Virus record (IMG/VR): IMGVR_UViG_3300037110_000087
Span: 62,001 to 126,000 of that record
Length of the DNA: 64,000 nucleotides
Direction: 5' to 3' (one strand)
The number at the start of each line of letters is the position of its first letter. Within the stretch, counting starts at the first letter, position 1. The position numbers and the translations under genes are program-made. Below are positions 10,300 to 60,566 of the stretch, piece after piece. Below the pieces are notes generated by a model. It did not search any database and was not told the DNA's origin. It worked only from the letters and a program-made list of their open reading frames with translations.

Positions 10300-10425
10300 A
10301 TGAGAACCAGAAAGAGAATGACCTCCGCAAGAGTTATTTTGATTGCCCTAGGCATACTATGGTGGGTCCTCTCTCTACCCTGGCGACTAGTTAAAAGGAT
10401 ACTTGATGAAATTAAGAATTGCTAA
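10300..10425 (+). CDS. Possible 41-aa single-pass membrane peptide
   Basis: MRTRKRMTSARVILIALGILWWVLSLPWRLVKRILDEIKNC, translated by hand; below the ORF-track cutoff. Confidence 0.3.
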   Translation: MRTRKRMTSARVILIALGILWWVLSLPWRLVKRILDEIKNC

Positions 10426-11437
10426 AATCAAAAGTACCAAGATGGCCTTTATCAGAACAAAAGCTATGGCTCAAGGAGACTTATTTAGAGCCGTTAATAC
10501 CGCTATTAAATACGGAGAAGATTATTCTGAATTGGCAAAGTTTGGTAAGAATGGTGGACAGTTCACAGAAGAAGAGAGAGCCTGCTTAATAGAAGAGATT
10601 CGCGCTCTTACTTCCACCAGGGAGAACATAGGAGAGCTTCAGAACCTACTCCGGGTGGTTGAAACTTCCCCGGCCATTAGTGACTTAGGAATGGTTGGTA
10701 AGGTGGAGAAGGAAGCCGGTAGAGAACTAAAGGTAAAAGATCGTAAGAATTTCCGCAGTAGAGATATGAAGAGAGTCTTCCTTGACATTGATGGAAAAAG
10801 TTACCCAGCTTACTCGGAAGATGCTAGCGGTAAATGGCTTACTCCGTATTTCACAAAAGAAGTAGCGGATCAAGTTGTACGCGACTGGAATACCATTGAT
10901 GAGGAAGGCGGTCATCTTGATTATGATGATGACTCCATTGAGGGTGCATACTATGATGAAGAAAATGGCATCCGGTTCGAAGGTGAAGAATGCTACGTGG
11001 ATGGTGAACTAACAATTCTGTTCCCTATAGGTGAGGGTGAATGGGGTTGGGATATTGATTCTGGTTACGAGCGTAGGGAAAGAAACCCTATTGACTATAA
11101 TAAAATAAAAAATATCAGTGGAGATAAGACCCTCGCTCCGGGTGGAAAGATTCCTGGAATCAAGACAGAAGACGAAGGAAGAGAACTTAGTCCAGAAGAG
11201 CTTGAAATTACTGATTCCGACAAGGATTTCTTGAGAGGCATGGGTATCAAGGGCAAGCGCATCCGGGTCGTGGCAGTTAATGATGTCAATGCAGTACCGG
11301 AAAAATTCAAGCCCAAAGAAACTAAGAAACAACCAGCTGAAGTTGTTGAAGGTCTGGGAATCACTACTAATGGGCCAGCTGCGACCACAGAAGATCTAAT
11401 GACTCCTGTCGAATCAGTAGCGAAGGTGAAGGAATAA
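10403..11437 (+). CDS. Multi-segment protein with weak leader (MKLRIA), acidic central domain and GIKG module; putative virion cargo
   Basis: Basic N-terminus ending RTKA; acidic 'WLTPYFTKEVA...LFPIGEGEWGW' domain; EITDSDKDFLRGMGIKGK module. Confidence 0.7.
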   Translation: MMKLRIAKIKSTKMAFIRTKAMAQGDLFRAVNTAIKYGEDYSELAKFGKNGGQFTEEERACLIEEIRALTSTRENIGELQNLLRVVETSPAISDLGMVGKVEKEAGRELKVKDRKNFRSRDMKRVFLDIDGKSYPAYSEDASGKWLTPYFTKEVADQVVRDWNTIDEEGGHLDYDDDSIEGAYYDEENGIRFEGEECYVDGELTILFPIGEGEWGWDIDSGYERRERNPIDYNKIKNISGDKTLAPGGKIPGIKTEDEGRELSPEELEITDSDKDFLRGMGIKGKRIRVVAVNDVNAVPEKFKPKETKKQPAEVVEGLGITTNGPAATTEDLMTPVESVAKVKE

Positions 11438-28662: not shown

Positions 28663-29175
28663 TTAAGATTCCCACATTGGTGTCATAACCTTAGCCCATA
28701 CTGCACCATAAGAATCCTCACTTGACTGGTTGATCCAAGTTTCGTCAATTCCGGGTCCGGTGATTGCAATCTCGTCGGCAAAATCTTCTGTCAAGCATTG
28801 ACTAATGCCAGTCTTCATTTCTTCGATAGAGCTGTAGTCTTCATCCCAACTGCCACCAGAGTCGGTCTGACGGAATTCCACATGATAACTGCCACTCGAT
28901 GTGGGTTCCAGATCTGCTTTCTTCACCTTGTTCTTCAGAGGCTTGACAGCACTCTTGTCATTGCCAGATTTGTTGTCCTTGTTGAACTTGATCTGAGGAT
29001 ACTTTTTGGTCTTGGCCAACAGAGGATCAGAGAATGGGGTTTCCAACTCTGGAGCGCCCACATTTGGTCCATCGATTAGAGGCAGAACGGCACCCTTGTC
29101 GTTGCCAGAATCATTTCTCTTATTGAACACAATAGTTGGATATTTCTTGACAGATTTGAAGTTTAATTTAGACAT
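28663..29175 (-). CDS. Leader/YPTI-module protein with acidic C-terminal domain
   Basis: Two YPxIxFNK..SGNDK.AV.PL modules, then KKA and an acidic domain. Confidence 0.75.
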   Translation of the reverse strand: MSKLNFKSVKKYPTIVFNKRNDSGNDKGAVLPLIDGPNVGAPELETPFSDPLLAKTKKYPQIKFNKDNKSGNDKSAVKPLKNKVKKADLEPTSSGSYHVEFRQTDSGGSWDEDYSSIEEMKTGISQCLTEDFADEIAITGPGIDETWINQSSEDSYGAVWAKVMTPMWES

Positions 29176-29179
29176 AATT

Positions 29180-29686
29180 CTATCCTCTTTTCAATTTTAA
29201 CATTTTGGGCTTTAGTTTTCCTTTGATACCCATTCCTTTCAGGAAATCTTTATCAGCATCAGTGATCTCAGGCAATGGCTCAAGATCCATCAATTGATCT
29301 TTGATCCCCTCCATCATTTTCTGATGTTTCTTGATTCTTTCTTCCCTTTCCTCCCTGGTCGCGAATGTGTTGTTAGCACAGTCTATACAAATGGTTGATT
29401 CACCATCCTCACTCACACAGATTGGATCTTCTTCGGTATCCTTGATTCCACCACCACACCAGTCACAATTAATCACATCGCCCAGACCAGCTTTCTTGGC
29501 TTCCAGCATCTCTTTCAGTTCACCGCCCTGATCCTTCAGTTCTTTCTTGTCTTCTTTCTTGGTCGGATGCTTGAGGAATTTCACCAGTTCCTTATGTTCA
29601 TCAATGGCGTCCTCTAAGGACATCGAGTAAGTGTCATTCTTGATCGTGTCAGATTGCTTGACAAATGCTTTTAAATTAAGTTTCAT
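29180..29686 (-). CDS. Leader-bearing protein with CxxC..CxxC zinc finger and GIKG module
   Basis: Start MKLNLKA at 29686; CDWC...CIDC; EITDADKDFLKGMGIKGK. Confidence 0.75.
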   Translation of the reverse strand: MKLNLKAFVKQSDTIKNDTYSMSLEDAIDEHKELVKFLKHPTKKEDKKELKDQGGELKEMLEAKKAGLGDVINCDWCGGGIKDTEEDPICVSEDGESTICIDCANNTFATREEREERIKKHQKMMEGIKDQLMDLEPLPEITDADKDFLKGMGIKGKLKPKMLKLKRG

Positions 29687-29688
29687 AA

Positions 29689-31074
29689 TCAGTCCTTTGG
29701 ATCTAGTGTAACATTCAAGACCCATTTCTTTTTGCCAGAATCCCAGATTCGATACCAGCCCTTCTTGGCTGCTTCTTCCTGCTCATTTACACCCGCTGGA
29801 ACTCTGAAGTTGAACTTATGCTTGCGTACCTGTTGTCTCGTGTAGTAATAATCAGGCCCCAGTTCTTTTACACATTCAAAGCCCAGATCTTGATAAAGTT
29901 TCCCAGTATGCAAACGATTATCTGAGAAACTTATTATCTTCTGATATTGATTGAGTTGGAAAATCAAATTAAGTGCTTTCTGATGTGGATTCCAGGTTTT
30001 ATACTGATGGTCGAAACTCGCTCTGGTCCATTCTAGTTCGGCCCCAGGCCGTTTCTTGAAAACCCAAGCTCCGACAACCTTGGATTTATACTTCGCGCAA
30101 ATGTAATGGGTCCCACTACACTGATTATCGCCAAGATAATGGAATTTGCTTAGAAATTCCTTCACATCATTCATATGACAAAATTCATAGGTTGGCTTGA
30201 TACGCTTTTGTGATTTGGGAATTAGTTGATCGATGATAAGCTGCCAATTCTCATCTCCAAAGATCTGGAGCAAACGAATTCCGAACGATTCACATAAGAG
30301 ATGTTTATCATGATCTCTTTTGGGTTCATTCGCTACAGCTTCCGAGTGCCATCTTAATCCTTGATATTCTATCCCAGTTCTAATAGAAGGAATCCAGATG
30401 TCAAGCTCATATGGCTTTATTATGGTTTTGTCTGAAAATAAAGCGTCAGGGAAAGATTTAACAATCAATTCGAAGATCTTGTGAGCGGGGCTTGTATCCG
30501 CCGTCCCTGCAACAACACAACCACAGCTAAGAGTGAACTCCCTCAGCACATCTTTACCAACAATCTCTTTAGAATTCCCACAATCACACAAAAACCGGAA
30601 TTTCTCACCTGTTTTGAGACTGAACTCTCCTTCTGGCAATCGGTCGGGATCGAGTCGTAGCTTACCCCATTTTTCATTCAATATTAAGCGATCAGTAAAG
30701 TTACATCTCCCACAACGATGAACATTACCTCTAACTGCTGTCCGGAATGCTTTTATGGAAGTCCTACCACAATCACAGATGAACTGCACTTTCATAGCAG
30801 ATCCCTGACTCCACTCATCCAGAAGAGGTTGATCTGGATCTAATCTCAGCTCGCCCCATTTTTGTTCGAGCCAATAGCTCTTCGGTTTGTCCTCGCAATG
30901 ACCACAAGATTTTAGTTTTATAACTGCGTAGAACTGTTTGGTCGTTGTTCTACCACAGCTACAAATGAATACAAATTCAGAATGAGATCCTGGACCCCAA
31001 TCGTTGGGAAGGAGCTGATTCGGGTCAAGATGCAGGGTACCAAACTTTGTATTAAGCCATTCTTCGCGCTTCAT
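29689..31074 (-). CDS. Hef-like/very-short-patch PD-(D/E)xK homing endonuclease with three Zn-ribbon repeats and a C-terminal GNAT-like domain
   Basis: 3x K[FW]G.L.LDP...F.C.CG; YELDIWIP...GIEYQGLRWH; SFSDNRL..G.LY..LGF...YRIWDSG. Confidence 0.7.
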   Translation of the reverse strand: MKREEWLNTKFGTLHLDPNQLLPNDWGPGSHSEFVFICSCGRTTTKQFYAVIKLKSCGHCEDKPKSYWLEQKWGELRLDPDQPLLDEWSQGSAMKVQFICDCGRTSIKAFRTAVRGNVHRCGRCNFTDRLILNEKWGKLRLDPDRLPEGEFSLKTGEKFRFLCDCGNSKEIVGKDVLREFTLSCGCVVAGTADTSPAHKIFELIVKSFPDALFSDKTIIKPYELDIWIPSIRTGIEYQGLRWHSEAVANEPKRDHDKHLLCESFGIRLLQIFGDENWQLIIDQLIPKSQKRIKPTYEFCHMNDVKEFLSKFHYLGDNQCSGTHYICAKYKSKVVGAWVFKKRPGAELEWTRASFDHQYKTWNPHQKALNLIFQLNQYQKIISFSDNRLHTGKLYQDLGFECVKELGPDYYYTRQQVRKHKFNFRVPAGVNEQEEAAKKGWYRIWDSGKKKWVLNVTLDPKD

Positions 31075-31100
31075 TAGTAAGTTAACCCAAATTTGTCTAT

Positions 31101-31130
31101 ACAGAAAGAGGGGAACCGAAGTCCCCCTCT
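31101..31130 (-). terminator. Rho-independent terminator after the major capsid gene
   Basis: 10-bp stem AGAGGGGGAC-TTCG-GTTCCCCTCT followed by TTCTGT. Confidence 0.85.
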
Positions 31131-31153
31131 TGACCTGTTTATGAACGACTCAT

Positions 31154-32272
31154 TTAGAGTCTGGTGCCCTTGTTCACGCCGTTCGCGTTAACGATGACGG
31201 GTGCGACGATCTCGCGGATGAGCCAGCCACGTGCGGGGATACCCAGGACGTTCTTGTTGATTGGCTCGCTAACGAGGCCCTGGCGAACCAGGAACTGACC
31301 GAGAGTCTTGGGGTGTGAGAAGAAGTAAATCTCACCGGCCTGGAGGACGCGCAGCTGAGAGTTGATGAATGCGTCAGTGTGCATTGTCACACCAAGCAGA
31401 CTACCAAGCTCACCAGTCAGCACGATTTCATGCTTGGTGACGGGATCAAACCAGGAAGCGAAGGTAGGATCAGCTACCAGATCGTTCATGAGGTTGTTAG
31501 CCATCCAGCAATTGCTCACTGGTAGACCGCGATTCTCAACCTGATTCTTCAAGCTCTGATAGACCGCAGGGGTCAAGCTGGAGAAGAAAGTGGGAACGTT
31601 GAGGGTGGCAGCAGCCTGATCAGCCAGGGTCTTCCACTGGCGGTCTTCCTGCACCATGACCATTTCCATACCGTCCTCAAGCTTCTCTTCAAGAAGATCA
31701 GCACCGAGGCGAGCGAGTTCCTTTTCCTCAATCAGGATGTGTGACTCGATGTAATTCTCACGCAGGTAAAGCTCTCTCTGCTTGATGTGAGATACAGGGG
31801 TCTGGCCATCAGTTGACATCGAGAAAGCAAGGGTATCCTGCTTGCGGATGTAGACTTTGCACTCTTCCTGGACCTTGAGTTCACGTTCCTGAGCGAAACG
31901 GCGAAGGAAACCAGTACGGCTGATTGTGGTGCGGATTTCGTTGGTCACTTCTTCACCGATGGTGCCGAAGTTTGCAGCGGAACGGGTTAAGCTAGCGGTG
32001 CGGATATCAGAGGCTAGCTGATCCAGGGTTTCGCGAGCAGAAGCCTGCTTCTGAATCTGGCCCTTCTGAGCAGCACTAACGATGTTAGCAATCTGCTGGA
32101 AGGCATCACGCTTGTTGTAGGCGTTAATCTCGCCATTGCTGTTTGCGACGGCTTCGTTGGACTGGGAATACCCGCCCTTGGAGGTCACGCCACCAGCTTT
32201 CTGCTCTGAGGCAGGAATGTCGGTACCGGTAAGGGTAGCAACAAACGGGTTTCTTTTTGGTGTTACGGCCAT
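31154..32272 (-). CDS. Major capsid protein (HK97 fold)
   Basis: 372 aa; NGEINAYNKRD, RTGFLRRF, QEDRQW, WFDPVTKHEIVLTGELGSLLG; strong codon bias; followed by a terminator. Confidence 0.8.
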   Translation of the reverse strand: MAVTPKRNPFVATLTGTDIPASEQKAGGVTSKGGYSQSNEAVANSNGEINAYNKRDAFQQIANIVSAAQKGQIQKQASARETLDQLASDIRTASLTRSAANFGTIGEEVTNEIRTTISRTGFLRRFAQERELKVQEECKVYIRKQDTLAFSMSTDGQTPVSHIKQRELYLRENYIESHILIEEKELARLGADLLEEKLEDGMEMVMVQEDRQWKTLADQAAATLNVPTFFSSLTPAVYQSLKNQVENRGLPVSNCWMANNLMNDLVADPTFASWFDPVTKHEIVLTGELGSLLGVTMHTDAFINSQLRVLQAGEIYFFSHPKTLGQFLVRQGLVSEPINKNVLGIPARGWLIREIVAPVIVNANGVNKGTRL

Positions 32273-32277
32273 TTTAA

Positions 32278-32829
32278 TTACTCCTTTGTGGAACGGTTAA
32301 GCTTTTCTAAAGCGGTTGCAGCTTCAGTGGCGGTTGCTTGGTGAAGAGACATTACGGAATTATCCGGCAGAACGATATAGCACTTGCCATCTGCATCGTT
32401 GATTACTTCCACTCCCTCACCGTCAATTTTTACATCAATGGTGACGTCCTGGTCTTCTCCTACTCCTAATTCTTCAATTGTGGTTGGAATTGGATTCTCT
32501 ACTAGTGGGTCCAATTCATCTCCCGTTACTGCAGAATCGGGTGTGGGATCTGGGAAGCTTTCCTCAATTTCAGGAAACTCAGCTTCATCATCAGTCAGGT
32601 CGGCAATTACCTTAAGCTCAGAAATGGCATTAGATAACGCGATCTGGAAGAAACCAATGCTGGCATGAGATCCAACATGGGCAATACGAGCCTTAATGAC
32701 CGGATTGGAAGCCCTGGAAACCAGAGCCTCCAGGTCCTTGTCAGTGATACCTTTAGCCAGGGCCGCAGTCGCCTCCAGCTGAGCAATTCGCCCAACCAGT
32801 GACTCAAGTGACTTTGCGACTCGCTTCAT
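32278..32829 (-). CDS. Acidic head-associated hypothetical protein
   Basis: Between the putative decoration gene and MCP; SD GAGGAG. Confidence 0.6.
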   Translation of the reverse strand: MKRVAKSLESLVGRIAQLEATAALAKGITDKDLEALVSRASNPVIKARIAHVGSHASIGFFQIALSNAISELKVIADLTDDEAEFPEIEESFPDPTPDSAVTGDELDPLVENPIPTTIEELGVGEDQDVTIDVKIDGEGVEVINDADGKCYIVLPDNSVMSLHQATATEAATALEKLNRSTKE

Positions 32830-32841
32830 GGATCACTCCTC

Positions 32842-33507
32842 TTATACGTTGTATTCGATACCGAGGAAAGGATCGGCAGCGGATGGGACCGAGATGCAAA
32901 CGCCGCACTGATTGCCAGCACCAGAAGTGCCAACAAAACCACCAGCCAAGAGTTTGATTGCAGTACCAACGGTATAAGTATCGTTAGCCTTGAAGTTATT
33001 CACGTACAGGCGGGTCAGACTGCGGAAGATAGCGGCCTTACGGATGAACGCGGAAGCGGAGGGGATTGGGCTAATTCCAAGCATTGCCTGCTGCATTGGT
33101 GTCAGCTGGTAGTTGTAATTAACGGTCATTGACTCACCAGCGTGTGCAGCCACGAAAGTTACCTGATTACCGGAAACGGTGAAATCAGCACCGGCAACTG
33201 CGCCGTTCTGATTGAAGAACACCATATTGGTGATGGAGGTAGTATCGGGCAGAACCACGGTCAGAGGAGAGGTGGAAGGAACCTGTAGGGCGTAGCCATA
33301 ACGGGTGCCGAGAGTAGAGGCATGCTTATCAAGGTAGAGGAAGCCAACAAACTGGTCGGCATTGGTGCCACCAGAAAGCAACATGACTTCGTTACCGAGA
33401 GCATCAGCACCACGAACCATGGCAAGACCAGATTCAGTGGGATCTACAGAAGCATCAAGAGCAAGCTCAATGATGTTTGTGTACTGGAGACGGGAAATAT
33501 CTAGCAT
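32842..33507 (-). CDS. Putative capsid decoration/minor head protein
   Basis: Position upstream of MCP; beta-rich; C-terminal PSAADPFLGIEY. Confidence 0.55.
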   Translation of the reverse strand: MLDISRLQYTNIIELALDASVDPTESGLAMVRGADALGNEVMLLSGGTNADQFVGFLYLDKHASTLGTRYGYALQVPSTSPLTVVLPDTTSITNMVFFNQNGAVAGADFTVSGNQVTFVAAHAGESMTVNYNYQLTPMQQAMLGISPIPSASAFIRKAAIFRSLTRLYVNNFKANDTYTVGTAIKLLAGGFVGTSGAGNQCGVCISVPSAADPFLGIEYNV

Positions 33508-33525
33508 TTTTGTTTTCTCCTTGGG

Positions 33526-34635
33526 TTAGCGACTTAAAAAGCCGGTACGGAAATTTCTGGTTTCAACTGGAACCACTGGGACGCTGGCTTTGTGCAAACG
33601 AGCAGCAAACTCACGGTCAGGGGTGTAATCGGAAGTGGGAAGACCCTTGCCGAAATCGGAACTGGCGCGGGAAACGAACTTCTGGAAATCTTCCTTGACA
33701 GAAGCAGAATATCCGCTGATTTCATCAGTTACTTCCTGAAGAGCGGCAATGAACTCACCGTCGTCGTGCATTACGCCATGGGCGAACACATCAGGCTGGT
33801 CAATGCTTGCTTCAGCAGCAGCTTCGAAAATGCGAGCGCCGAGAGGATTGGTGCGAACACCGGCCTTCAAGGCAGTCCAGGCAGTTGCCATGTCATTGAA
33901 AAGACTGACGCGAGCTTCAGCTTTGATTGCAGCAACATCAACGGGTTCCTGAATGGAAACCACGCGACCCTTGCTAATGAAAACCTTAGCTTTCAGGAGA
34001 GGCAGGACTACTGACCAGCCACTCTTCTCAGCAGCTTTCTGGACCTGAGCGGTAAAGGTAGCAGTATTGTTGAACAATGCCAGTACATCCTCACTCTTGT
34101 CTTCCTGATCCGCATAAGCGACGGTAGCGATGGGGAACCCATCCCTGGTCAGGGTCAGAACTGGGTTCTCAGTGGAACCTGTCTGCACAAAACTTGCCTT
34201 GCAGCCTTCAAGACCTTCCATGCAAGACTTGGTGTCAGCTTCTTCACTGTAAGCTTCTGGCTTATCAGCTGGAGGGGCCTGAGTCTCTAGATCGGTTGGT
34301 TCTGGCTCTTCACCTTCAGTTTCCTCACCTTCGTCGTCATGCACTTCGATGGTAATCATAGTAATGGGTTCGCCATCACCATAATCCTCGATCTGCAGGG
34401 GTTCAGTAGGAACAACTAAAAGATTGCCACTTGGGGTGGTATAGACCTGAGCGTCTAGCTGCTCAGCTCCTTCTGGAATCTCGACATCGCTAGTGAGCTT
34501 AGTCTCAACCGCAGGAACTTCAGCTTCTTCTGTCTCTACATCAACAGGAGGAGGAGCCTGGGTTTCGTCTTCAGCGCGACGCTTGTGATTTCCAGAGGTT
34601 CTTTTGTTCAGTTGTTCAAAGCTTTCTCTTGCCAT
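33526..34635 (-). CDS. Putative prohead scaffold/core protein
   Basis: First gene of the head operon; highly acidic disordered N-terminal half; SD GGAGG. Confidence 0.5.
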   Translation of the reverse strand: MARESFEQLNKRTSGNHKRRAEDETQAPPPVDVETEEAEVPAVETKLTSDVEIPEGAEQLDAQVYTTPSGNLLVVPTEPLQIEDYGDGEPITMITIEVHDDEGEETEGEEPEPTDLETQAPPADKPEAYSEEADTKSCMEGLEGCKASFVQTGSTENPVLTLTRDGFPIATVAYADQEDKSEDVLALFNNTATFTAQVQKAAEKSGWSVVLPLLKAKVFISKGRVVSIQEPVDVAAIKAEARVSLFNDMATAWTALKAGVRTNPLGARIFEAAAEASIDQPDVFAHGVMHDDGEFIAALQEVTDEISGYSASVKEDFQKFVSRASSDFGKGLPTSDYTPDREFAARLHKASVPVVPVETRNFRTGFLSR

Positions 34636-34887: not shown

Positions 34888-35277
34888 ATGAGCAAAAAGG
34901 ATTTTTGTGGTTGTAGAGTGACTAGAGATAGTGATGGCCAATTAATGTGGTTAGTGCGCTTCGAAAATGATGGGTTTGTTTGTCATAATACAGGTGATGA
35001 AGAGACTAAGATGTTCATTGCTGGGGAGGAATTACCTGAGACATGGTATGACCTTGATGAAATTACTTTCTTTGTTGATCCCATGGACCCCCTTACATCA
35101 ATGATGTCAAAATTACTCGACTTTTTCTCCAATGATTCCCCTAGCAGTCTGCATTATATCAAGAAGTCTATGATCTATGATGATGGTACTTCCGAGATGT
35201 TAGAATGTGGTTTTAAAGTGGTATATCAGGGAGATCTCTGGAAGATCAAGGCTGAGAGGGTCCTAGTGAATGACTAA
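34888..35277 (+). CDS. Hypothetical protein
   Basis: SD AAGGAG. Confidence 0.6.
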   Translation: MSKKDFCGCRVTRDSDGQLMWLVRFENDGFVCHNTGDEETKMFIAGEELPETWYDLDEITFFVDPMDPLTSMMSKLLDFFSNDSPSSLHYIKKSMIYDDGTSEMLECGFKVVYQGDLWKIKAERVLVND

Positions 35278-36403: not shown

Positions 36404-36811
36404 ATTGCGATCTTGATCTGTTCTGGATAAAAGGCAACCCAGGAATCCGCTCGATCATGAGCGGCTTCATATTCATTTCGATAAACTAACCCATCGTAAC
36501 CGTTCATAGTGGCTCTAATCTTGGGGATCAGGCCCTAGATCTTTCACACGTTGAGGGTTTTTGATATTTAAATAGACTGGTATATAGCGAATTCCTTCTT
36601 CTCCGCGAAAATCCAAACGATCGGCATGTTCATCCACCTGTGAGAGAGTACCAAAATGGGCACCCATTTTTGTATCGAATGTACCAAAGTCATGTGAAGT
36701 GACATGATATAGTTTTAAAGGTTTCCCTTTAGAATCAACCACCTTGCTGCCTGAGAACCAGAATGTATCAAGTTCGGCGGTCTTAAGAAAAGCCCTCAGG
36801 GTGAGTTTCAT
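36400..36811 (-). pseudogene. ART-PolyVal-like ADP-ribosyltransferase, leader-bearing, frameshifted
   Basis: MKLTLRA...SKVVDSKGKPLKLYHVT...YIPVYLNIKNP stops at 36515; the expected C-terminus NGYDGLVYRNEYE...SWVAFYPEQIK lies in another frame and ends at 36400. Confidence 0.7.
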
Positions 36812-36812
36812 T

Positions 36813-37202
36813 TTATCCGTCCCTATATTTTTCGCCCAGAGCGTTAAGGGCGAGAAAACCTTTATCTGTGCCTCTCCAATTCTCCCCAGTGAAGGTATCA
36901 ATCAGGAAGACTGTGTTACAAGCACAGTAAGTCTTTAGAAAGTGTTTGACTGCCGCGAAATTAAGGGACAACCTCGGCCCTATTATTTCGAAGACCCCCA
37001 ATCCATCAGTGGAGAGTCTACACCAGCCAGCAGCCTTCATCGTGTCTGCTATGTCACCGAAATCCTTGTAGTCTCTTTTGACAATTTGGTACGCCATATC
37101 ACGATGACCCTCGTAGGCACAAGGTATCATTTCGAGAGTGTTCAAATTGGCCCAGCCACACCCTGATGGTTGTTTGATATTAGCAACCAAATGGAGTTTC
37201 AT
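36813..37202 (-). CDS. Leader-bearing hypothetical protein (GW...GH...GWxR family)
   Basis: MKLHLVA start. Confidence 0.7.
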   Translation of the reverse strand: MKLHLVANIKQPSGCGWANLNTLEMIPCAYEGHRDMAYQIVKRDYKDFGDIADTMKAAGWCRLSTDGLGVFEIIGPRLSLNFAAVKHFLKTYCACNTVFLIDTFTGENWRGTDKGFLALNALGEKYRDG

Positions 37203-37624
37203 TACATATACTCCCCGGTCACCACGTTCATGATTTTCACGTGCTCAAAGATCGCGATGCTTCCGGCCTTGTCGCCTTGGACATAAGCGTCGAAGCCTTT
37301 CTTGCGCAGGGTTTCGAAGAACTCAATCGTCGCGTGGTTCATTTTCTCGTAGTGCTTTTCTCGATCGGCCTCAGTGGCGTGATAAGGATTTCTAACATCG
37401 AGCCAGCAGGTGTATAGTTCCCCTTCTTCTCCAATAAGGTTTGATTGGTACTCTTGATTCTTGGTGAACCAGATACCTTCCGGCTTTCGTTTCAATACAT
37501 TCAATTTCTTGGCCGCGCTACCATGGTACATACGACAGTTAATCTCGGTCTTAGGGAATGGACATTTGGACTGTTTGAATTCAGTCTTGAATCCTTTTCC
37601 CTTCGCAACAAAATGGAGTTTCAT
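37202..37624 (-). CDS. ART-PolyVal-like ADP-ribosyltransferase domain, leader-bearing
   Basis: MYHGS...GIWFT...YTCWLDVRNP...GFDAYV...IAIF. Confidence 0.7.
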   Translation of the reverse strand: MKLHFVAKGKGFKTEFKQSKCPFPKTEINCRMYHGSAAKKLNVLKRKPEGIWFTKNQEYQSNLIGEEGELYTCWLDVRNPYHATEADREKHYEKMNHATIEFFETLRKKGFDAYVQGDKAGSIAIFEHVKIMNVVTGEYM

Positions 37625-38400
37625 TTCTTTCTCCGATAATTAAGCTTCCGACTATACTGGTAGTGATTAGCCTCAATCCAACCCACCACCTTGTCCAGGT
37701 CCGCAGCCTTGAAATAGGGATGACTTTCATCACCCACGTACCACTCGTCGTCATACCCATTCTTTGAGACAGGTACAATATTCCGAGCAGAAGGACCCCA
37801 GAAAATAATCTGCTGCTCTTCATCACCAAAGTGGGAAACTTCGATTCCACTGGCTCGGAAAATAACAGCCTCTGTGCCATACTTGTTGGTCGGATAGTTG
37901 TAATTGATGTCAAAGGCGAAATTGTAACCAATGCCTCGTTTCCTGTTCTTAAACCAAGTGGTCAGACCAAGCTGCTCCATTTCCGCGAAGCCATACTTGA
38001 AACCGTCAGTCGCGATTGCGTAGGGGTCATCACAGAAGTGAATCAACCACCCATCCTTGAACACGCTATCGAATTCCAGATGCATGTAAGAGGGACATTC
38101 TACCGCGTCGTGGTTCATTGCATCATATTGCTTCTCATTGAAGAATTTGACCATGAGCGCATCAGGCATCGAATAGATTGAGTCGTAATTGAAATCCCCG
38201 TCTTCACCAAACAGGGTGATGAATTCACTCACTTCTTCATAAGGTTCTTCTTCTAAAAATTCCGAAAGCAAATGGGGAAAGACACTGGCTAGTTCACGCC
38301 CTTTATCAGCCTCATCCATTTCCAGATAATTCTTAAGATGCACAATTTCTTGGCAAAGGTAAGCCTGTCTGGTGATGTGGGCCTTTAGGTGTAGTCTCAT
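37621..38400 (-). CDS. Leader-bearing protein, possible ART fold
   Basis: MRLHLKA; WLIHF...GYNFAF...KYG...HFGDEEQQIIFW. Confidence 0.5.
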   Translation of the reverse strand: MRLHLKAHITRQAYLCQEIVHLKNYLEMDEADKGRELASVFPHLLSEFLEEEPYEEVSEFITLFGEDGDFNYDSIYSMPDALMVKFFNEKQYDAMNHDAVECPSYMHLEFDSVFKDGWLIHFCDDPYAIATDGFKYGFAEMEQLGLTTWFKNRKRGIGYNFAFDINYNYPTNKYGTEAVIFRASGIEVSHFGDEEQQIIFWGPSARNIVPVSKNGYDDEWYVGDESHPYFKAADLDKVVGWIEANHYQYSRKLNYRRKK

Positions 38401-38412
38401 GAACTCATTGTA

Positions 38413-38844
38413 TCATGCCGATCGATCCGCTTGTTCGAGCAAATATTCGGCCAATAACCGATCTTCAGGTTCCCCCAGGATTCCCTTGGACCACCGGGCC
38501 ATCATGTGAAATAGCTCGAATAATTCGCTGATGTAGACGGTATCGCTCTTGAACAAACCGAGCATCCGAGCAATTTCTGATGCCAGCTGCTGGTGCACTA
38601 GCAGATGTTCCTTGTATCGTGGGTATTCGACCTCCCGCATCAATTTCTCTTCGGTAGCGAAATGCAGGTCGAAATATATGACCAGGGAGGCAAACGAATT
38701 CCGAATTTCGGATTCTCTCACCGGGGCTTCAAATGATGCGAGAAATCGGTTGAAGATAACCACCAACTGTCGATGCTGACTATCTATCTTTTCATGACCT
38801 GTTTCACAGCAAGTATGCCAGTGAACCAAATACGGATTAACCAT
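38413..38844 (-). CDS. Bacteriohemerythrin-like protein
   Basis: TGHEKIDSQH, HFATEEKLM...YP...H...H. Confidence 0.85.
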   Translation of the reverse strand: MVNPYLVHWHTCCETGHEKIDSQHRQLVVIFNRFLASFEAPVRESEIRNSFASLVIYFDLHFATEEKLMREVEYPRYKEHLLVHQQLASEIARMLGLFKSDTVYISELFELFHMMARWSKGILGEPEDRLLAEYLLEQADRSA

Positions 38845-38874
38845 TTCCTCACCTTTCGGGATTTATTATCAAAA

Positions 38875-38918
38875 CAATAAGCGGATCTTCACCAGTGTAA
38901 CAGAGGATCCGCTTATTG
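38875..38918. repeat. 13-16-bp inverted repeat (terminator or operator)
   Basis: caataagcggatc ... gatccgcttattg. Confidence 0.8.
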
Positions 38919-56034: not shown

Positions 56035-57243
56035 ATGAAACTCCATCTTAAAGCCTTTGTTAAAAAAGCTTATGGTACGGATTACGCCTTTACAACAGGT
56101 GAATCTGTTAAGGTAGATGGGAAGGCGGTTTCCATTTGGTGCATTTTAGTTGTTGATACACCAGACTACATTGGTGGGCGAATGGCCATCAGAAAATGTG
56201 ATCTTGGTCTAGATGAAGATGAACACGAATATTTCGTCATTTTTACAACTAGCAGGAATCTGACCGGCGAAGAAATCGAAGGTGGAATCTATCTTAGAGA
56301 AATGATCGGTGATTGGGATGAAATTTACGAACTCTTGGATTGGAGTGAATGGAGTCCAAGGGACCAGTACAATCTTGGGGAATTTGAATATTTCGAAGAA
56401 ACTGGTGAGTGGCCTGATGCAATGAAACCAGAACTCTCTGAATCAGATATAAAAGAATTAAAGCAATGGGGAATTAAAGGAAGGAATAAAATGGAACTTC
56501 ATCTAGTAGCGACTATTCAGAAGAAACCGATCAAAAAGATATCGGTCCATCGCAAAAAGGGCGCTATTCCTCCTCCAGTTGTTACCCCGACACCTCAACC
56601 GGTTAATCCACCGGCCCAGACTGAAGTAGTGAATCAGAATACACAGACCACGAACACCCAGACTCAGGCTCCTCCTCCTAAGTGGATGGAAAATCCCTGC
56701 TACAATCCTCTATACATTGGTGATACTGGACAATCAGCTGCTTCGCCAGAGAAGGCTGAAGCAGCCGCCAAGGATAGATTGGCTAAGGGTATTATTGACC
56801 AATTTCATAAACAGAAATATTCCTTTAGTGAACAAATAATTGGGGCATGGGTTAAGAAATGGAGCAAGATCGGAATTGAAGGCGTTGATGGTCACTTCCA
56901 AGATCAGGGTTGGAATCGTGCCTGGGCAACGCTGGATGCTAGACAGTATGGCGATTTGGCCAAATATGTTAGAGATCACCCAACTGGTGAACAGAATGGG
57001 CAAAATCTCCAGCAGAACAACAACCAGACTACCCAGAACAACAACCAGAATTCCAAGAATATCGTGTATGATAAGACCCAGACCAAGACTTCTGATAAGG
57101 GGCCTCTGGCACCAGGATTCCTTCCTGATGGTCATTATCCATCAAAACAGGATCTGCTGAAGCAGTTTCCGAATGTACAAAATGACGATAGTTTAGCACG
57201 ACGCCAATATGATCTAGCAAGACACCAACAGCCACAAGGATAA
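56035..57243 (+). CDS. Leader-bearing two-part protein (second leader at 56491) with Pro- and Gln/Asn-rich segments
   Basis: MKLHLKAFVKKA; GIKG module; internal MELHLVA. Confidence 0.75.
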   Translation: MKLHLKAFVKKAYGTDYAFTTGESVKVDGKAVSIWCILVVDTPDYIGGRMAIRKCDLGLDEDEHEYFVIFTTSRNLTGEEIEGGIYLREMIGDWDEIYELLDWSEWSPRDQYNLGEFEYFEETGEWPDAMKPELSESDIKELKQWGIKGRNKMELHLVATIQKKPIKKISVHRKKGAIPPPVVTPTPQPVNPPAQTEVVNQNTQTTNTQTQAPPPKWMENPCYNPLYIGDTGQSAASPEKAEAAAKDRLAKGIIDQFHKQKYSFSEQIIGAWVKKWSKIGIEGVDGHFQDQGWNRAWATLDARQYGDLAKYVRDHPTGEQNGQNLQQNNNQTTQNNNQNSKNIVYDKTQTKTSDKGPLAPGFLPDGHYPSKQDLLKQFPNVQNDDSLARRQYDLARHQQPQG

Positions 57244-57246
57244 GAA

Positions 57247-58302
57247 ATGAAGATGAAATTTGTTGCCAAAAAAGTTAAGGTTTACCCAACTATTGTCTTC
57301 AACAAGGATAATAAGTCGGGTAATGATAAAAGTGCTGTTCAGCCCTTGAAGAAGAAAGCAGGGATTCAGGATGACGCTCACAAGTGTGTATTTTGGATTG
57401 ATGAGTTTGATGACAATCCAGACGTAAACCCCGATTGTTTTGTCGATCTCGCAAATCCGGCTATGACCAAAGAATTATGTGCCAAAGCTGGGATTGAACT
57501 GATTGGCTACGATTCGAGCAGAGGGTGTGCCTCAGGATATCTACCCGATGATTTATATAATGAACTCGAAACTACGGGTTCGTTCGATAAGACCGTCCAA
57601 GGAAGCAATGGAGTTTATTATCAGATTCATGCTCCCTTCGAAACCCTCCCTGAAGATACCCTTAATTTCGAGGGAAAGACCAAGAGATACCCAACTATTA
57701 CCTTCCACAAGAAGAATCAGTCAGGTAATGATAAAAGTGCTGTTCAGCCTTTGAAGAAAGCTGAAGTAAGGACCGCTGAGAAATCCACTAAATGTGTCGA
57801 TTGTGGTACCCCAGGTACTGTAAAAGATATGGTGTCTAATAATGAAGGTGCTGGTTACGTTTGCAACAAGTGCTTTCACAAACGCCGTATTGAAGATGAT
57901 AAAGCCAAGAAAGGATCCCCTAAGACCGCCTTGGTGCCCAAAGAACTGAAACTTCCTCCCGAATCTCTTAAAGGACCGCAGGGTCCAGCGAATAAAGAGA
58001 CTGTAGAGAAGCAAAAACTCGCTCCGGTTCCTCATGAACCGATGAAGGCTAAAGCGAGTGCGCAGAATCCAGTATTTGTCACCCTAGAAGAAAGTGAAGA
58101 GAACGAGAACGGGACTAGCATGACCTTCTATTATCACAAGGGAACAGCCACCACAGATGAGATTAAGCAATTTATTATTGATCATGATGGACGTTTTGCC
58201 TGTGGTCTTTCGGTGATGGTTAATGACGGTATGACAGTTGATCTCTGTGAGGAACAGCCTTTTCCAGAATATGATAGGTTTCAAGCTAATCCAGTGGGTT
58301 AG
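57247..58302 (+). CDS. Leader/YPTI-module polyprotein-like protein with acidic and Zn-finger segments
   Basis: Two YPTI modules, CVDC..CNKC, KTAL..KGP module. Confidence 0.75.
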   Translation: MKMKFVAKKVKVYPTIVFNKDNKSGNDKSAVQPLKKKAGIQDDAHKCVFWIDEFDDNPDVNPDCFVDLANPAMTKELCAKAGIELIGYDSSRGCASGYLPDDLYNELETTGSFDKTVQGSNGVYYQIHAPFETLPEDTLNFEGKTKRYPTITFHKKNQSGNDKSAVQPLKKAEVRTAEKSTKCVDCGTPGTVKDMVSNNEGAGYVCNKCFHKRRIEDDKAKKGSPKTALVPKELKLPPESLKGPQGPANKETVEKQKLAPVPHEPMKAKASAQNPVFVTLEESEENENGTSMTFYYHKGTATTDEIKQFIIDHDGRFACGLSVMVNDGMTVDLCEEQPFPEYDRFQANPVG

Positions 58303-58311
58303 GAGGATAAA

Positions 58312-59181
58312 ATGACGAAGCTAAAATTCAAAGCAAAGAAAACCAAGAAATACCCTACTATTACCTTTCACAAGGATAACAAGTCAGGCAATGACAAGAG
58401 TGCTGTCAAGCCTCTGAAGAAAAAGGCTTCACCTACCTCCATTCTCTTTGTGGATGAGATTGAAGGTGTACTACACGAACATATTATCAACTGTGAAGCT
58501 ACTGCTCCTCCTGAGGAGATCCTTAGGGCAGTTGATATGGCATGCTTCGAGGGAGATGAAGAAGCACTCAATGAGAGTGGGCCACTCCGCCTAGTCTCTG
58601 ATACCACAATTGATGGTAATCGCGTTATCGAAGCTTGTTTTGGTGATAGAAATCATCAGGCTTGGATTGCAATTGGTCCTACTGCCAAAAGGGCTATCAC
58701 TAAAGCTTCTGATATGGATTTTGAAGCATCCGTCAAGACCGCTCTCAAACCAACCGAAGTGAAAATGAATCCGGGTTCCGAGAAGGGTCCCAAGGGCGAA
58801 CAGAACAAGGAGACTGTTGCTCAGAAGCCAATTATCACAGTCGAACCGGGCGAGAAAGATAAGGTAGAAAAGAAAGCTGCTGGAGAATGGGGTCCCGGTT
58901 CGGGAGCGATTTCCGGATCCTTGGCAGACAGGCTCAATCAGGCGAAAGCTTTCCCTGAGCGAATAAGCAGGGGTAAGTTCGAGCTTTGCAAATTCACTGA
59001 TGAAGTAGATCCCAGCACACAATGCTATGAAAATGACGGTCCTTGCGTTGGTTTCGAGGGTTGTGAGCTTTATCTTGATGATCATCCAGAAGGGTCTGAC
59101 AGAGGTGGTTATGTCGTTTTCTGCGAACTGAATGGGGAAACTGCTCATTTCGATGAAGGCATGGGTGACTGGGTGGACTAA
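58312..59181 (+). CDS. Leader/YPTI-module polyprotein-like protein with two acidic segments
   Basis: One YPTI module and one KTAL..KGP module; SD AGGAGG. Confidence 0.75.
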   Translation: MTKLKFKAKKTKKYPTITFHKDNKSGNDKSAVKPLKKKASPTSILFVDEIEGVLHEHIINCEATAPPEEILRAVDMACFEGDEEALNESGPLRLVSDTTIDGNRVIEACFGDRNHQAWIAIGPTAKRAITKASDMDFEASVKTALKPTEVKMNPGSEKGPKGEQNKETVAQKPIITVEPGEKDKVEKKAAGEWGPGSGAISGSLADRLNQAKAFPERISRGKFELCKFTDEVDPSTQCYENDGPCVGFEGCELYLDDHPEGSDRGGYVVFCELNGETAHFDEGMGDWVD

Positions 59182-59188
59182 CAAAGCA

Positions 59189-59629
59189 ATGAAGCTCCAT
59201 CTGGTCGCTAATATCAGGAAAGCAATCATCACCCAGCATACAGACCTGGGTGGTGAACCCATGAGTCCTATCATGGAAGCCATCTATTGGTGCCTGATCT
59301 TCAATATTGAGCGTTTTGTATCAGTTAGGGAACAAAAACAAGAATGGAATGGGTTCAAAAGCATTGTTCCCAATCCTGATGAAAAGCCAACTCGTAAGAT
59401 GATTGGGAATGAAAAACCCCTCTCCTACCTCATGGTCAAATATTATTGGAAAGCGTTGAAACTCGATCGAGTTTTAGATCAGGAGATCAAGGATCATTAT
59501 CTTTTTGAGATTGATGCAGATTCTGAAGAGGAACTTATTGCTAGATTCGATCAAATCCTACAAATGATTGAAGGTCATGTCTGGGATCTTATCCTCGCCA
59601 GAAAAAAGGCCGACGATTTAAAACCCTAG
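59189..59629 (+). CDS. Leader-bearing hypothetical protein
   Basis: Start moved to MKLHLVANIRKA, just after the upstream stop. Confidence 0.7.
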   Translation: MKLHLVANIRKAIITQHTDLGGEPMSPIMEAIYWCLIFNIERFVSVREQKQEWNGFKSIVPNPDEKPTRKMIGNEKPLSYLMVKYYWKALKLDRVLDQEIKDHYLFEIDADSEEELIARFDQILQMIEGHVWDLILARKKADDLKP

Positions 59630-59673
59630 TCAATAAATGTTAAACTGGAGGAGAAATCCTCTGGAGTTAACTT

Positions 59674-60372
59674 ATGTCTGATCAGCAAGACCAATCAATC
59701 GATAGCCTCTTAGGTCAAATTGATGATACCTTTGATCCGACCTCTTATATCCCCACCGAACTGACTAACCATGTCTGTTGCGTCTGTGCTCTCCCTATCG
59801 GCCAGAGGATGGAACTTGAGAAGGAATTGTTCGAAACCTTCGATATTGAGGCATCAGTCACTAAGAATGCTCCTATCACTCTCCGAGATATTAGGAAGCA
59901 TCTGACTGAGTGTGTGGTGGAGAGAGATTCCATTATCCAGACTGGCAAGATGATTGGAGAACTTCAGGCCCAGCTCAGTTTGTTTGTCGAGGAGATGGAC
60001 AAATATCGGCTCTTGATTAATTCTAGTGAAAAGAATCCTGATATGATGCTGGCCTATAATGATATGTTTAAGAACTTCCGGACCTCAGTGGACTCAATTC
60101 GCAAGTACAATCCCCCACAGAGACAGGCCGAGGATATTAAGAATAACGCCATTAAGCCCTTGGTAATTCAGCTGCTCAGGACTACTATTGAGCAGTTCCG
60201 TAATACCAAGGACTATGTGGTAAATGCTTTTCCAGAGGCCAAGGACCGGATGGAAGAATCTTTTAGAATTGCCCTGAAGAACTGGGGTGAAATTGCTGAG
60301 TCCCAGCATAAACAATCATTAGTGAAAATGGCCGAGATCCTTGGGGTCCAACCCTCTGATCTAATGAAATAG
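59674..60372 (+). CDS. Helical protein with CxxC...H motif; possibly terminase small subunit-like DNA-binding protein
   Basis: VCCVC...DIRKHLTEC followed by a coiled-coil; function weakly inferred. Confidence 0.4.
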   Translation: MSDQQDQSIDSLLGQIDDTFDPTSYIPTELTNHVCCVCALPIGQRMELEKELFETFDIEASVTKNAPITLRDIRKHLTECVVERDSIIQTGKMIGELQAQLSLFVEEMDKYRLLINSSEKNPDMMLAYNDMFKNFRTSVDSIRKYNPPQRQAEDIKNNAIKPLVIQLLRTTIEQFRNTKDYVVNAFPEAKDRMEESFRIALKNWGEIAESQHKQSLVKMAEILGVQPSDLMK

Positions 60373-60377
60373 AGGTT

Positions 60378-60566
60378 TTGATGAAAGTACATTTACAAGC
60401 AACAGTTATTAAAACAGGCAGAGGCAAGGTAACTCTCCATACCGAGTTCAAGAAGCTGAAGAATGAGACTCCAGCCTATGTGAAGGACAATATTGGTGTA
60501 GATATCGAGAAAGATATGGACAAGACTGTGGACTACATGAAAGAATCGGGCGAGTATCCAAAATAA
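60378..60566 (+). CDS. Small leader-bearing protein
   Basis: MKVHLQA start; SD GAGG. Confidence 0.6.
   Translation: MMKVHLQATVIKTGRGKVTLHTEFKKLKNETPAYVKDNIGVDIEKDMDKTVDYMKESGEYPK

What the first reader, a model, noticed from the sequence alone, without database searches (positions are those of the whole stretch)
28663..34635. Recurrent K/R-x-A boundary shared by leaders, cargo junctions, scaffold and major capsid protein
Leaders and modules tend to end in K/R-x-A right before the payload: FVKKA|YG, FLKTA|EL, ITRQA|YL, NIRKA|II, LKKKA|GI, LKKKA|SP, KVKKA|DL, EAKKA|GL, EVRTA|EK, VEKKA|AG. The MCP N-terminal region has KQA, RTA and RSA, and the putative scaffold has KRRA. This pattern is what a single prohead-protease recognition site would produce. 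Two tagged cargo genes follow directly after the head operon. No protease gene was recognised in this window.
Basis: partly seen in the sequence, partly recalled or inferred. Interest (0 to 1): 0.65.

Follow-up and report, generated by a model that had tools for sequence, protein, structure and literature searches.

The report
Shared N-terminal tag on jumbo-phage cargo
An uncultivated 307-kb jumbo phage puts the same short basic N-terminal tag (M-K-L-x-L-x-A…) on at least 26 otherwise unrelated genes, most likely to load effector proteins into its capsid as phage T4 does; the proposed K/R-x-A protease cut site is only an optional tail of that tag and is not demonstrated.

Summary
Every quoted peptide is in the sequence, but most lie outside 28663-34635. 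The robust feature is a 7-12-residue N-terminal leader, M-K-L-x-[LF]-x-A-x-[VIL]-K-K-[A/S].

- It sits on 26 genes of the 307-kb phage, 11-12 of them in the window. The DNA pattern gives 22 hits against 1 control.
- It is conserved at protein level, not DNA level, and is fused to unrelated bodies (ART-PolyVal, NUDIX, SET, small acidic proteins).
- A second, roughly 30-residue basic module (KKYPTI…SGNDKSAV…PLKKKA) follows the leader in g41, g69 and g70, and recurs inside g41 and g69.

K/R-x-A ends the leader in 9 of 26 cases (0.4 expected) and ends 5 of 6 modules. In related phages that keep the leader it does so in only about 4 of 22.

In the capsid protein and the "scaffold", the motif frequency equals what composition predicts.

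The prohead protease exists but lies 21.5 kb beyond the window end. Leader genes sit next to head genes here and in relatives.

Verdict: a T4-like capsid-targeting tag is the best reading (about 0.5). K/R-x-A as the protease site is possible (about 0.25) but unproven. A Φ-x-Ala site is an equally good rival.

The parts
It has a basic N-terminal ~21 aa ending K-R-R-A (nt 34573-34581 = R19-R20-A21), then an acidic low-complexity stretch, then a conserved C-terminal domain.
   Evidence: No Pfam or PHROG hit. Orthologues sit upstream of the MCP in all close relatives. The basic-Ala boundary before the acidic stretch is kept only loosely in six relatives.
32842..33507 (-). g46, virion structural protein. 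It has an internal A-F-I-R-K-A (aa 153-158, about nt 33034-33049) that repeats leader residues 7-12.
   Evidence: phrog_16710, E=2.4e-10. Homologue of PaBG gp81, which runs as several gel bands in virions (PMC7412058). K-x-[A] is kept at this place in 6 of 8 relatives. Strict AF[VI][KR]K[AS] occurs internally only in g46 and G178.
32278..32829 (-). g45, 183-aa helical/acidic protein directly upstream of the MCP. R48-I-A50 is at nt 32680-32688.
   Evidence: No family hit. R-x-A|[HYF]-V-G is kept in 5 of 7 relatives.
31154..32272 (-). Major capsid protein, 372 aa. Candidate sites: I49-N50-A51, K75-Q-A77 (32042-32050), R91-T-A93 (31994-32002), R97-S-A99 (31976-31984).
   Evidence: phrog_2522, E=1.8e-57. 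About 30% identity to the PaBG, Lu11 and phiRSL1 MCPs. AF2 model with pLDDT 76: floppy 75-77, helix 79-96, break 97-99. Conservation over 80 homologues.
29689..31074 (-). g43, homing endonuclease inserted between the MCP gene and the tagged genes.
   Evidence: phrog_559, E=2.3e-43, and phrog_3339. Relatives carry other insertions at this spot.
29180..29686 (-). g42, tagged gene. The leader MKLNLKAFVKQS is at 29651-29686, and its start codon follows the g43 stop directly. EAKKA|G is at aa 62-66.
28663..29175 (-). g41, tagged gene. It has a variant leader (MSKLNFKS) plus two copies of the ~30-aa basic module (29068-29151 and 28915-29010). The second ends K-V-K-K-A|D, followed by an acidic body.
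36515..38400 (-). Four tandem tagged genes: g50 (36515-36811), g51 (36813-37202), g52 (37202-37624), g53 (37621-38400).
   Evidence: Leaders. g50 hits ART-PolyVal at 32.5 bits (cut-off 31.2) and g52 at 26 bits.
56035..60566 (+). Tagged gene cluster: g68 (56035-57243, second in-frame leader at 56491-56529), g69 (57247-58302, modules at 57274-57360 and 57679-57777), g70 (58312-59181, module 58342-58428), g71 (59189-59629), g73 (60381-60566).
   Evidence: No family hits. g68 has no homologue outside this genome.
10406..11437 (+). g15, a possible variant leader (MKLRIAK…, Lys instead of Ala at position 7).
   Evidence: No Pfam hit.

Best explanation
The window is part of a 307-kb uncultivated jumbo myophage whose capsid protein is of the PaBG/Lu11/phiRSL1 type.

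A short, basic, alternating (beta-strand-like) N-terminal leader, M-K-L-x-[LF]-x-A-x-[VIL]-[KR]-[KR]-[A/S], marks proteins for loading into the assembling prohead. In some genes it is extended by a roughly 30-residue basic module that also recurs as an internal junction.

The cargo would be effectors delivered with the DNA: ADP-ribosyltransferases, a NUDIX hydrolase, a SET-domain protein and small acidic proteins. This is the same logic as the capsid-targeting sequence of the T4 internal proteins and Alt. The genome's single prohead protease (Ser/His type, outside the window) may then trim the tag. K/R-x-A is the common but non-obligatory end of the tag, and at most one form of the site.

Shown: the leader family, its N-terminal specificity, its protein-level conservation, its attachment to unrelated bodies, its neighbourhood with head genes, and the existence of the protease gene.

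Inferred: packaging, cleavage, and the position of the cut.
For: Leader family:
- The DNA pattern for M-K-L-x-L-x-A gives 22 hits in this genome against 1 control, and none above control in PaBG, HRDY3 or 8 other distant jumbo relatives.
- 26 genes carry it.
- The core pattern occurs 26 times at N-termini. Internally it occurs 11 times against 14.7 expected.
- Synonymous codons are scrambled in leaders and modules.
- Bodies are unrelated by BLAST apart from three small paralogue groups.

Cargo types: ART-PolyVal (51.3, 32.5, 26 and 19.7 bits), NUDIX, SET. Leader net charge is +2.65, and 18 of 26 bodies are acidic.

Head linkage:
- Tagged genes follow the MCP here and in relatives L105 and G001.
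- Three tagged genes lie between the large terminase and portal genes.
- In relatives L119/L120, L121 and L122 a tagged gene lies directly beside the protease gene.
- G178, just downstream of the protease, carries both an internal AFVKKS and a module-like motif.

Protease: phrog_18299, E=1.4e-31. His107 and Ser159 are invariant in 33 homologues. The nearest named ESM-Atlas clusters are Peptidase_S78, S77 and S80.

Processing occurs in this phage group: the PaBG MCP loses about 20% of its mass, and gp81 (the g46 homologue) gives several bands (PMC7412058).
Against: - There is no virion proteome, N-terminal sequence or structure for this phage or any leader-bearing relative.
- One leader-like gene in relative L103 is an HNH_3 endonuclease, an odd cargo.
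- The protease-leader complex prediction gave no verdict. The protease fold could not be confirmed: the AF2 model has pLDDT 51 and there is no PDB sequence match.
- Cargo bodies contain K/R-x-A at the expected rate, so the tripeptide alone cannot define cleavage.
- The leader is confined to a narrow clade, and tagged genes are not syntenic in every relative (L006, L104).
Confidence: 0.5

Rival explanations
1. One reading: one prohead protease recognises K/R-x-Ala and cuts after the Ala in the leaders, the module junctions, the MCP propeptide and the scaffold-like proteins.
For: - 9 of 26 leaders and 5 of 6 modules end this way, against 0.4 expected.
- Two tandem [KR]-x-A are conserved in the N-terminal 30 aa of 11-12 of 12 close protease homologues, where autoprocessing would be expected.
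- MCP [IVM]-R-x-A93 is kept in all 13 close relatives and in PaBG and HRDY3.
- g45 R-x-A50 is kept in 5 of 7 relatives, and g46 K-x-A159 in 6 of 8.
- K75-Q-A77 of the MCP lies in the only sub-50 pLDDT loop, at 20.7% of the length, matching the roughly 20% mass loss in PaBG.
Against: - The motif is missing in 17 of 26 leaders here and in about 18 of 22 in relatives.
- The basic residue at MCP position 91 is kept in only 25 of 80 homologues, and A93 sits inside a predicted helix with an i, i+3, i+4 hydrophobic pattern.
- K75-Q-A77 is not conserved.
- Conserved-column enrichment is 2-fold, P=0.07, like the control motifs.
- Density in the MCP N-termini equals the composition expectation.
- Cargo bodies are not depleted.
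Confidence: 0.25
2. The protease needs Ala at P1 with a hydrophobic residue at P3 (Φ-x-Ala|), as herpesvirus assemblin does at (V/L/I)-x-A|S. Leaders would be cut after the invariant L5-x-A7, and the MCP after I49-N50-A51. K/R-x-A is then incidental.
For: - Ala7 is the one leader residue kept in every lineage. It occurs in 27 of 33 N-termini that match the first six positions, and in relatives G001, G002, L103, L105, L119, L121 and L122.
- G47-E-[ILFM]-N50-A51-[S/Y] is the most conserved block of the MCP N-terminal 100 aa (N 77/80, A 78/80). It lies in a coil before helix 54-69.
- Phage prohead proteases share the assemblin fold, and assemblin sites are V/L-N-A|S (own knowledge, not tested here).
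Against: - Removing 51 residues is 14% of the MCP, rather less than the roughly 20% reported for PaBG.
- A 7-residue leader would be very short for a targeting signal that must act before cleavage.
- The conserved R-x-A pairs in the protease N-terminus do not fit a hydrophobic P3.
- The assemblin-like fold of this protease was not confirmed.
Confidence: 0.2
3. The leader has nothing to do with the capsid. It could be an uncleaved N-terminal signal for something else: a degron for timed turnover by a host AAA+ protease, a docking strand for the phage's MoxR-type ATPase or another complex, or a translation-initiation-region preference.
For: - There is no direct evidence of packaging.
- A Met-basic-hydrophobic N-terminus resembles known ClpX N-terminal motifs (own knowledge).
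- An AAA_5/MoxR ATPase gene is a fixed neighbour of the head operon.
- Several tagged enzymes (NUDIX, SET, a possible HNH) would also make sense as cytoplasmic early proteins.
Against: - Conservation extends over 7-12 residues at protein level with free synonymous sites, which rules out a purely nucleotide or initiation effect.
- Tagged genes are repeatedly placed inside or beside head-gene blocks, next to the protease in three relatives.
- The leader tail and the module recur inside two head-module proteins.
- ART-PolyVal domains are typical of head-delivered polyvalent proteins (PMC5512222).
Confidence: 0.2

Closest known systems
Phage T4 capsid-targeting sequence (CTS) of internal proteins IPI-III and Alt, removed by the gp21 prohead protease
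   Same: - A roughly 10-residue N-terminal peptide is shared by otherwise unrelated, fast-evolving proteins encoded in small tandem clusters.
- The cargo includes an ADP-ribosyltransferase.
- The phage encodes one Ser/His prohead protease.
   Different: - The sequence is unrelated: M-K-L-x-L-x-A… against T4's MKTYQEFIAE.
- The T4 tag always ends in the protease motif L/I-x-E, whereas here no single motif ends all tags.
- There are far more tagged genes (at least 26).
- An extra ~30-residue module also serves as an internal junction.
- Packaging and cleavage are not shown here.
Propeptides of phiKZ/201phi2-1/SPN3US head proteins, cut by gp175/gp245 at S/A/G-x-E (PMC5694885, PMC10052503)
   Same: A jumbo myophage with many head-internal or ejected proteins processed by one protease. 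Propeptides may act as targeting signals.
   Different: - A different capsid lineage and a different protease family by sequence (no S80 or S77 Pfam hit).
- There is no x-E motif.
- The phiKZ-type propeptides are long and dissimilar to each other, not a shared short tag.
Prp-processed N-terminal extension of ribosomal protein L27 and of the capsid and scaffold proteins of Staphylococcus phage 80alpha (…KLNLQFF|A…)
   Same: A short N-terminal alternating strand. g42 begins M-K-L-N-L-K-A-F, which shares K-L-N-L and F with the L27 leader.
   Different: - There is no F-F-A cut motif.
- The tag is on cargo, not on the MCP or scaffold.
- There is no Prp (PF04327) gene in the phage.
- Relatives of this phage infect Proteobacteria, which lack the L27 extension (own knowledge).
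Herpesvirus assemblin maturation sites (V/L/I)-x-A|S
   Same: Ala at the proposed P1. The MCP block I-N-A-[S/Y] and the leader L-x-A have the same form. Prohead proteases of tailed phages share the assemblin fold (own knowledge).
   Different: A eukaryotic virus. The fold of this protease was not verified, and no cleavage data exist.
Polyvalent proteins of phages and conjugative elements (Iyer et al. 2017, PMC5512222)
   Same: The ART-PolyVal domain, and the proposed delivery with the DNA to act on the host early.
   Different: Here the domains are separate small proteins, each with its own tag, or two-cargo fusions, not one giant multidomain polypeptide.

Membership tests
T4-type capsid-targeting sequence system | The same short N-terminal peptide on several otherwise unrelated proteins | tested here: met
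   26 genes. Bodies are unrelated by BLAST. The pattern is N-terminal specific.
T4-type capsid-targeting sequence system | The tag ends in the cleavage motif of the phage's prohead protease in all members | tested here: inconclusive
   K/R-x-A ends 9 of 26 leaders, or 13 of 26 if Ser/Gly/Pro are allowed at the last place. The protease's specificity is unknown.
T4-type capsid-targeting sequence system | The phage encodes a prohead (head maturation) protease | tested here: met
   Genome 147505-148212 (window-equivalent 85505-86212). phrog_18299, E=1.4e-31, with invariant His107 and Ser159. No Pfam S77/S78 hit.
T4-type capsid-targeting sequence system | Tagged proteins are present in proheads or virions, and the tag is sufficient for packaging | not testable with these tools
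   Uncultivated phage. No proteome exists.
T4-type capsid-targeting sequence system | Sequence similarity of the tag to the T4 CTS, and an L/I-x-E end | tested here: not met
   The leader consensus has no similarity to the T4 CTS and no x-E end.
Prp/L27-type leader | Leader ends in the F-F|A motif | tested here: not met
   No leader has F-F-A.
Prp/L27-type leader | A Prp cysteine protease (PF04327) is available | tested here: not met
   No match in the phage genome at E≤1. The host is unknown.
phiKZ/SPN3US-type propeptide processing | S/A/G-x-E cleavage motif and an S80-family protease | tested here: not met
   No such motif ends the leaders. Peptidase_S80 appears only as an ESM-Atlas neighbour at 0.90, with no HMM hit.
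HK97-fold major capsid protein (phrog_2522) | Profile match and an HK97-like secondary-structure order (N-arm, E-loop, spine helix, A domain) | tested here: met
   E=1.8e-57. The AF2 model has E-loop strands 128-182 and a spine helix 192-224.
ART-PolyVal (PF18760) | Score above the Pfam gathering threshold | tested here: met
   g50 scores 32.5 bits and G41 scores 51.3 bits against a cut-off of 31.2. g52 (26) and G18 (19.7) are below it.

The most novel reading that the evidence does not exclude
A lineage of jumbo phages devotes 6% or more of its genes to a tag-directed protein-loading system of its own. The system has three parts: a 7-12-residue beta-strand leader, an optional ~30-residue basic adaptor module, and two-cargo polyproteins joined by that module. 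All would be trimmed by a prohead protease with Ala at P1, as in herpesvirus assemblin. The tag would then be a ready-made handle for loading foreign proteins into large capsids, and a way to list a phage's injected effectors from sequence alone.
Probability: 0.3. Interest if true: 0.7.

Novelty: new variant of a known kind. Interest (0 to 1): 0.5.

Why it matters
If the leader is a packaging tag, the full set of proteins this phage injects (ADP-ribosyltransferases, NUDIX, SET and about 20 unknowns) can be read directly from the genome. That is rarely possible for uncultivated phages.

It would be a second, independent example of the T4 capsid-targeting principle, in a different capsid lineage and with a different tag. 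The junction module suggests cargo made as polyproteins.

Tried and rejected
- **Complex prediction.** Protease (with alignment A6) plus residues 1-60 of g68 gave no verdict (score 0.01). This is not evidence either way.
- **Protease fold.** The AF2 model from a 5-row alignment was too poor to search (pLDDT 51). No PDB match was found by sequence or by profile. Pfam gave no protease family, and there are no PF04586 or PF04327 hits in the genome.
- **Close relatives by single-protein scan of IMG/VR.** None were found. An alignment query worked.
- **IMG/VR scan for the DNA pattern of M-K-L-H-L-K-A.** It returned 24 single, unrelated hits and no other multi-copy genome.
- **g68 homologue search.** Only the protein itself was found, so no orthologue test of its leader boundary was possible.
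- **Motif avoidance.** Neither the cargo bodies nor the mature MCP is depleted of the motif.
- **Upstream regions of the leader genes.** No shared promoter-like element was seen by eye.
- **Literature.** No cleavage-site data exist for the PaBG/Lu11/phiRSL1 group.
- **Rejected readings.** DNA-level repeat or recombination-site explanations fail because synonymous sites are scrambled. A signal-peptide or lipoprotein reading fails because the leader has no hydrophobic core and no Cys.

Full report
**What the window is.** The window is bases 62001-126000 of a 307,124-bp virus record that is 98% complete.

The gene at 31154-32272(-) is the major capsid protein (MCP). It hits phrog_2522 at E=1.8e-57. 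Its nearest cultured relatives, at about 30% identity, are the jumbo phages PaBG, Lu11, phiRSL1, HRDY3 and Erwinia/Xanthomonas phages. Metagenomic relatives reach 73% identity.

Upstream on the same strand lie three genes:
- g45 (32278-32829);
- g46 (32842-33507), a virion structural protein of phrog_16710;
- g47 (33526-34635).

Downstream lie a homing endonuclease gene (29689-31074, phrog_559) and then g42 and g41.

**The observation.** All quoted peptides exist, but seven of the ten leader and junction examples lie outside the stated coordinates.

What recurs is an N-terminal leader. Genome-wide, 26 genes begin M-[KR]-[LMV]-x-[LFIM]-x-A. Eleven are in the window (g41, with a variant leader, g42, g50-53, g68-71, g73), and g15 is a further possible variant.

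Four results characterise the leader:
- The degenerate DNA pattern for M-K-L-x-L-x-A hits 22 times against 1 for the reversed control.
- The pattern is N-terminal specific: 26 N-terminal cases, and 11 internal cases against 14.7 expected.
- Codon choice at the conserved Lys, Leu and Ala positions is spread over the synonymous codons, so the constraint acts on the protein.
- Apart from two small paralogue pairs and the module-bearing genes, the protein bodies share no similarity.

Position-wise information is high for residues 1-7. It is 1.2-1.6 bits for residues 8-11 (x-[VIL]-K-K), 0.8 bits at residue 12 (Ala in 7, Ser in 4 of 26), and noise beyond that.

A second element, about 30 residues long (KKYPTI…SGNDKSAV…PLKKKA), follows the leader in g41, g69, g70 and G38. 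It recurs internally in g41 and g69. Its synonymous sites are also largely scrambled.

g68 has a second, in-frame leader (MELHLVATIQKKP, 56491-56529) preceded by a Shine-Dalgarno-like AAGGAAGG.

**Is K/R-x-A more than chance?**

At the leader end, yes. Nine of 26 leaders have [KR]-x-A ending at residue 12 or 13. Shuffling gives 0.41, and other N-termini give 5 of 385. Five of six modules end with it. These are copies of one leader and one module, however, so this is conservation of a consensus, not independent recurrence.

Elsewhere, no:
- MCP has 5 sites against 3.6 expected, and g47 has 2 against 3.7.
- Over 80 MCP homologues the N-terminal density is 1.69 per 100 aa against 1.66 from composition.
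- Conserved [KR]-x-A columns in alignments of the protease, MCP, g45, g46 and g47 number 6 against 2.95 expected (P=0.07), on a par with several control motifs.
- Cargo bodies are not depleted: 37 against 32.3.

**Relatives.** The leader is a clade trait. It is present in the following relatives, where percentages for the first four are MCP identity and for the last three protease identity:

| Relative | Identity |
|---|---|
| G001 | 71% |
| G002 (M-K-L-x-I-x-A) | 61% |
| L103 | 70% |
| L105 | 73% |
| L119/L120 | 65% |
| L121 | 56% |
| L122 | 57% |

It is absent above control in PaBG, HRDY3 and eight other distant jumbo relatives. A scan of IMG/VR found no other genome with multiple copies.

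Only about 4 of 22 leaders in relatives end in K/R-x-A. The M-K-L-x-Φ-x-A core is what persists.

**Link to the head.** Three observations tie tagged genes to head genes:
- Tagged genes follow the MCP gene here, in L105 and, after an insertion, in G001.
- Outside the window the head module reads: large terminase, G169, three tagged genes (G170-172), G173, portal, G175, protease, G178.
- In L119/L120, L121 and L122 a tagged gene sits directly beside the protease gene.

G178 contains an internal AFVKKS, identical to residues 7-12 of G170, and a module-like KKYPEITFN…NDKGK. g46 contains AFIRKA. These two are the only internal matches to the strict leader tail in the proteome, about 0.04 expected by my estimate.

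**Cargo.** The Pfam hits are:
- ART-PolyVal: G41 at 51.3 bits, g50 at 32.5, g52 at 26, G18 at 19.7;
- NUDIX: G50;
- SET: G263.

Many of the others are small acidic proteins. Leaders average +2.65 net charge, and 18 of 26 bodies are acidic. ART-PolyVal domains belong to proteins thought to be delivered from phage heads (PMC5512222). T4 packages the ADP-ribosyltransferase Alt by an N-terminal signal (own knowledge; reviews PMC3012670, PMC9026906).

**The protease.** No protease gene lies in the window. A homologue of the annotated head maturation protease of phage HRDY3 lies at genome 147505-148212, 21.5 kb past the window end. It hits phrog_18299 at E=1.4e-31.

His107 and Ser159 are invariant in 33 homologues. 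The nearest named ESM-Atlas clusters carry Peptidase_S78, S77 and S80. The fold itself could not be verified.

In 12 close homologues the N-terminal 30 residues keep two tandem sites, R-[IVT]-A and [KR]-[HYT]-A. This is the best single piece of support for an R/K-x-A site.

**Where might the MCP be cut?** The PaBG MCP loses about 20% of its mass (PMC7412058). There are three candidates in this MCP:
- **K75-Q-A77.** It lies at 20.7% of the length, in the only internal sub-50 pLDDT loop, but it is poorly conserved.
- **R91-T-A93.** Ala is kept in 79 of 80 homologues and Leu/Ile/Val at position 90 in 78 of 80. The basic residue is kept in only 25 of 80, and the site lies inside a predicted helix.
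- **I49-N50-A51.** It is part of G-E-Φ-N-A-[S/Y], the most conserved N-terminal block (Asn in 77 and Ala in 78 of 80). It has the form of herpesvirus V/L-N-A|S sites (own knowledge).

The last candidate and the invariant L5-x-A7 of the leader support a rival rule, Φ-x-Ala. Sequence alone cannot decide between these.

**Conclusion.** The leader, with its optional module, is real, strongly non-random and head-associated. It is best read as a capsid-targeting tag for delivered effectors, and this remains an inference by analogy.

K/R-x-A is the frequent tail of that tag in this genome and a plausible protease site in some head proteins.

Noticed in passing
window 56491-56529 (inside g68, 56035-57243 +): A second, in-frame copy of the leader (MELHLVATIQKKP) begins with ATG and is preceded by AAGGAAGG. 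g68 may be a fusion of two tagged units, or may also be translated from an internal start.
   Followed up: partly
window 29689-31074 (-), compared with L068, L007 and L103: The spot just downstream of the MCP gene holds a different inserted gene in each relative: an HNH-type homing endonuclease here, a 456-aa radical-SAM-like gene in G001, a GIY-YIG gene in G002, and a DUF7487 gene in L103 and L007. This looks like a hot spot for mobile insertions.
   Followed up: partly
window 61413-61532 (+), inside ORF 61392-61826: A 144-aa ORF carries a 41-residue stretch with 43% identity to MCP residues 132-172 (E-loop region), E=9.4e-4. It may be a capsid-gene fragment or a decoy.
   Followed up: no
window 35270-36403 (+): An AAA_5/MoxR-type ATPase gene is a fixed upstream neighbour of the g47-g46-g45-MCP block in all close relatives, and PaBG and HRDY3 have ATPase genes at the same place. 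In this genome it is inverted relative to the head operon.
   Followed up: partly
genome 148222-149694 (+), outside the window (window-equivalent 86222-87694): G178, the 490-aa gene after the protease, contains an internal AFVKKS (leader residues 7-12), a Pro/Glu/Lys-rich linker, a module-like KKYPEITFN motif and 11 K/R-x-A. It is a candidate core or scaffold protein from which the tags may derive.
   Followed up: partly
window 31154-32272 (-), MCP residues 47-54: G-E-I-N-A-[S/Y]-x-K is nearly invariant across 80 homologues that are otherwise variable in the N-terminal 100 residues. It has the same form as herpesvirus protease maturation sites.
   Followed up: partly
   Followed up: no
window 24007-24696 (-) and 48067-50646 (+): Collagen-like Gly-x-y repeats occur in two tail-fibre-type proteins (phrog_3904 and others for the second).
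   Followed up: no
window 38413-40197 (-): An ORF with conserved His/Glu motifs resembling hemerythrin (its counterpart in relative L007 has a faint Pfam Hemerythrin hit) and an ORF with P-loop NTPase motifs resembling PhoH (read by eye, not searched against families) lie next to the four tandem tagged genes.
   Followed up: no
L103 13657-14055 (+): In a relative with 70% MCP identity, a gene with a leader-like start (MKLRFTA) has a Pfam HNH_3 hit. This is either a chance resemblance or a tagged nuclease.
   Followed up: no
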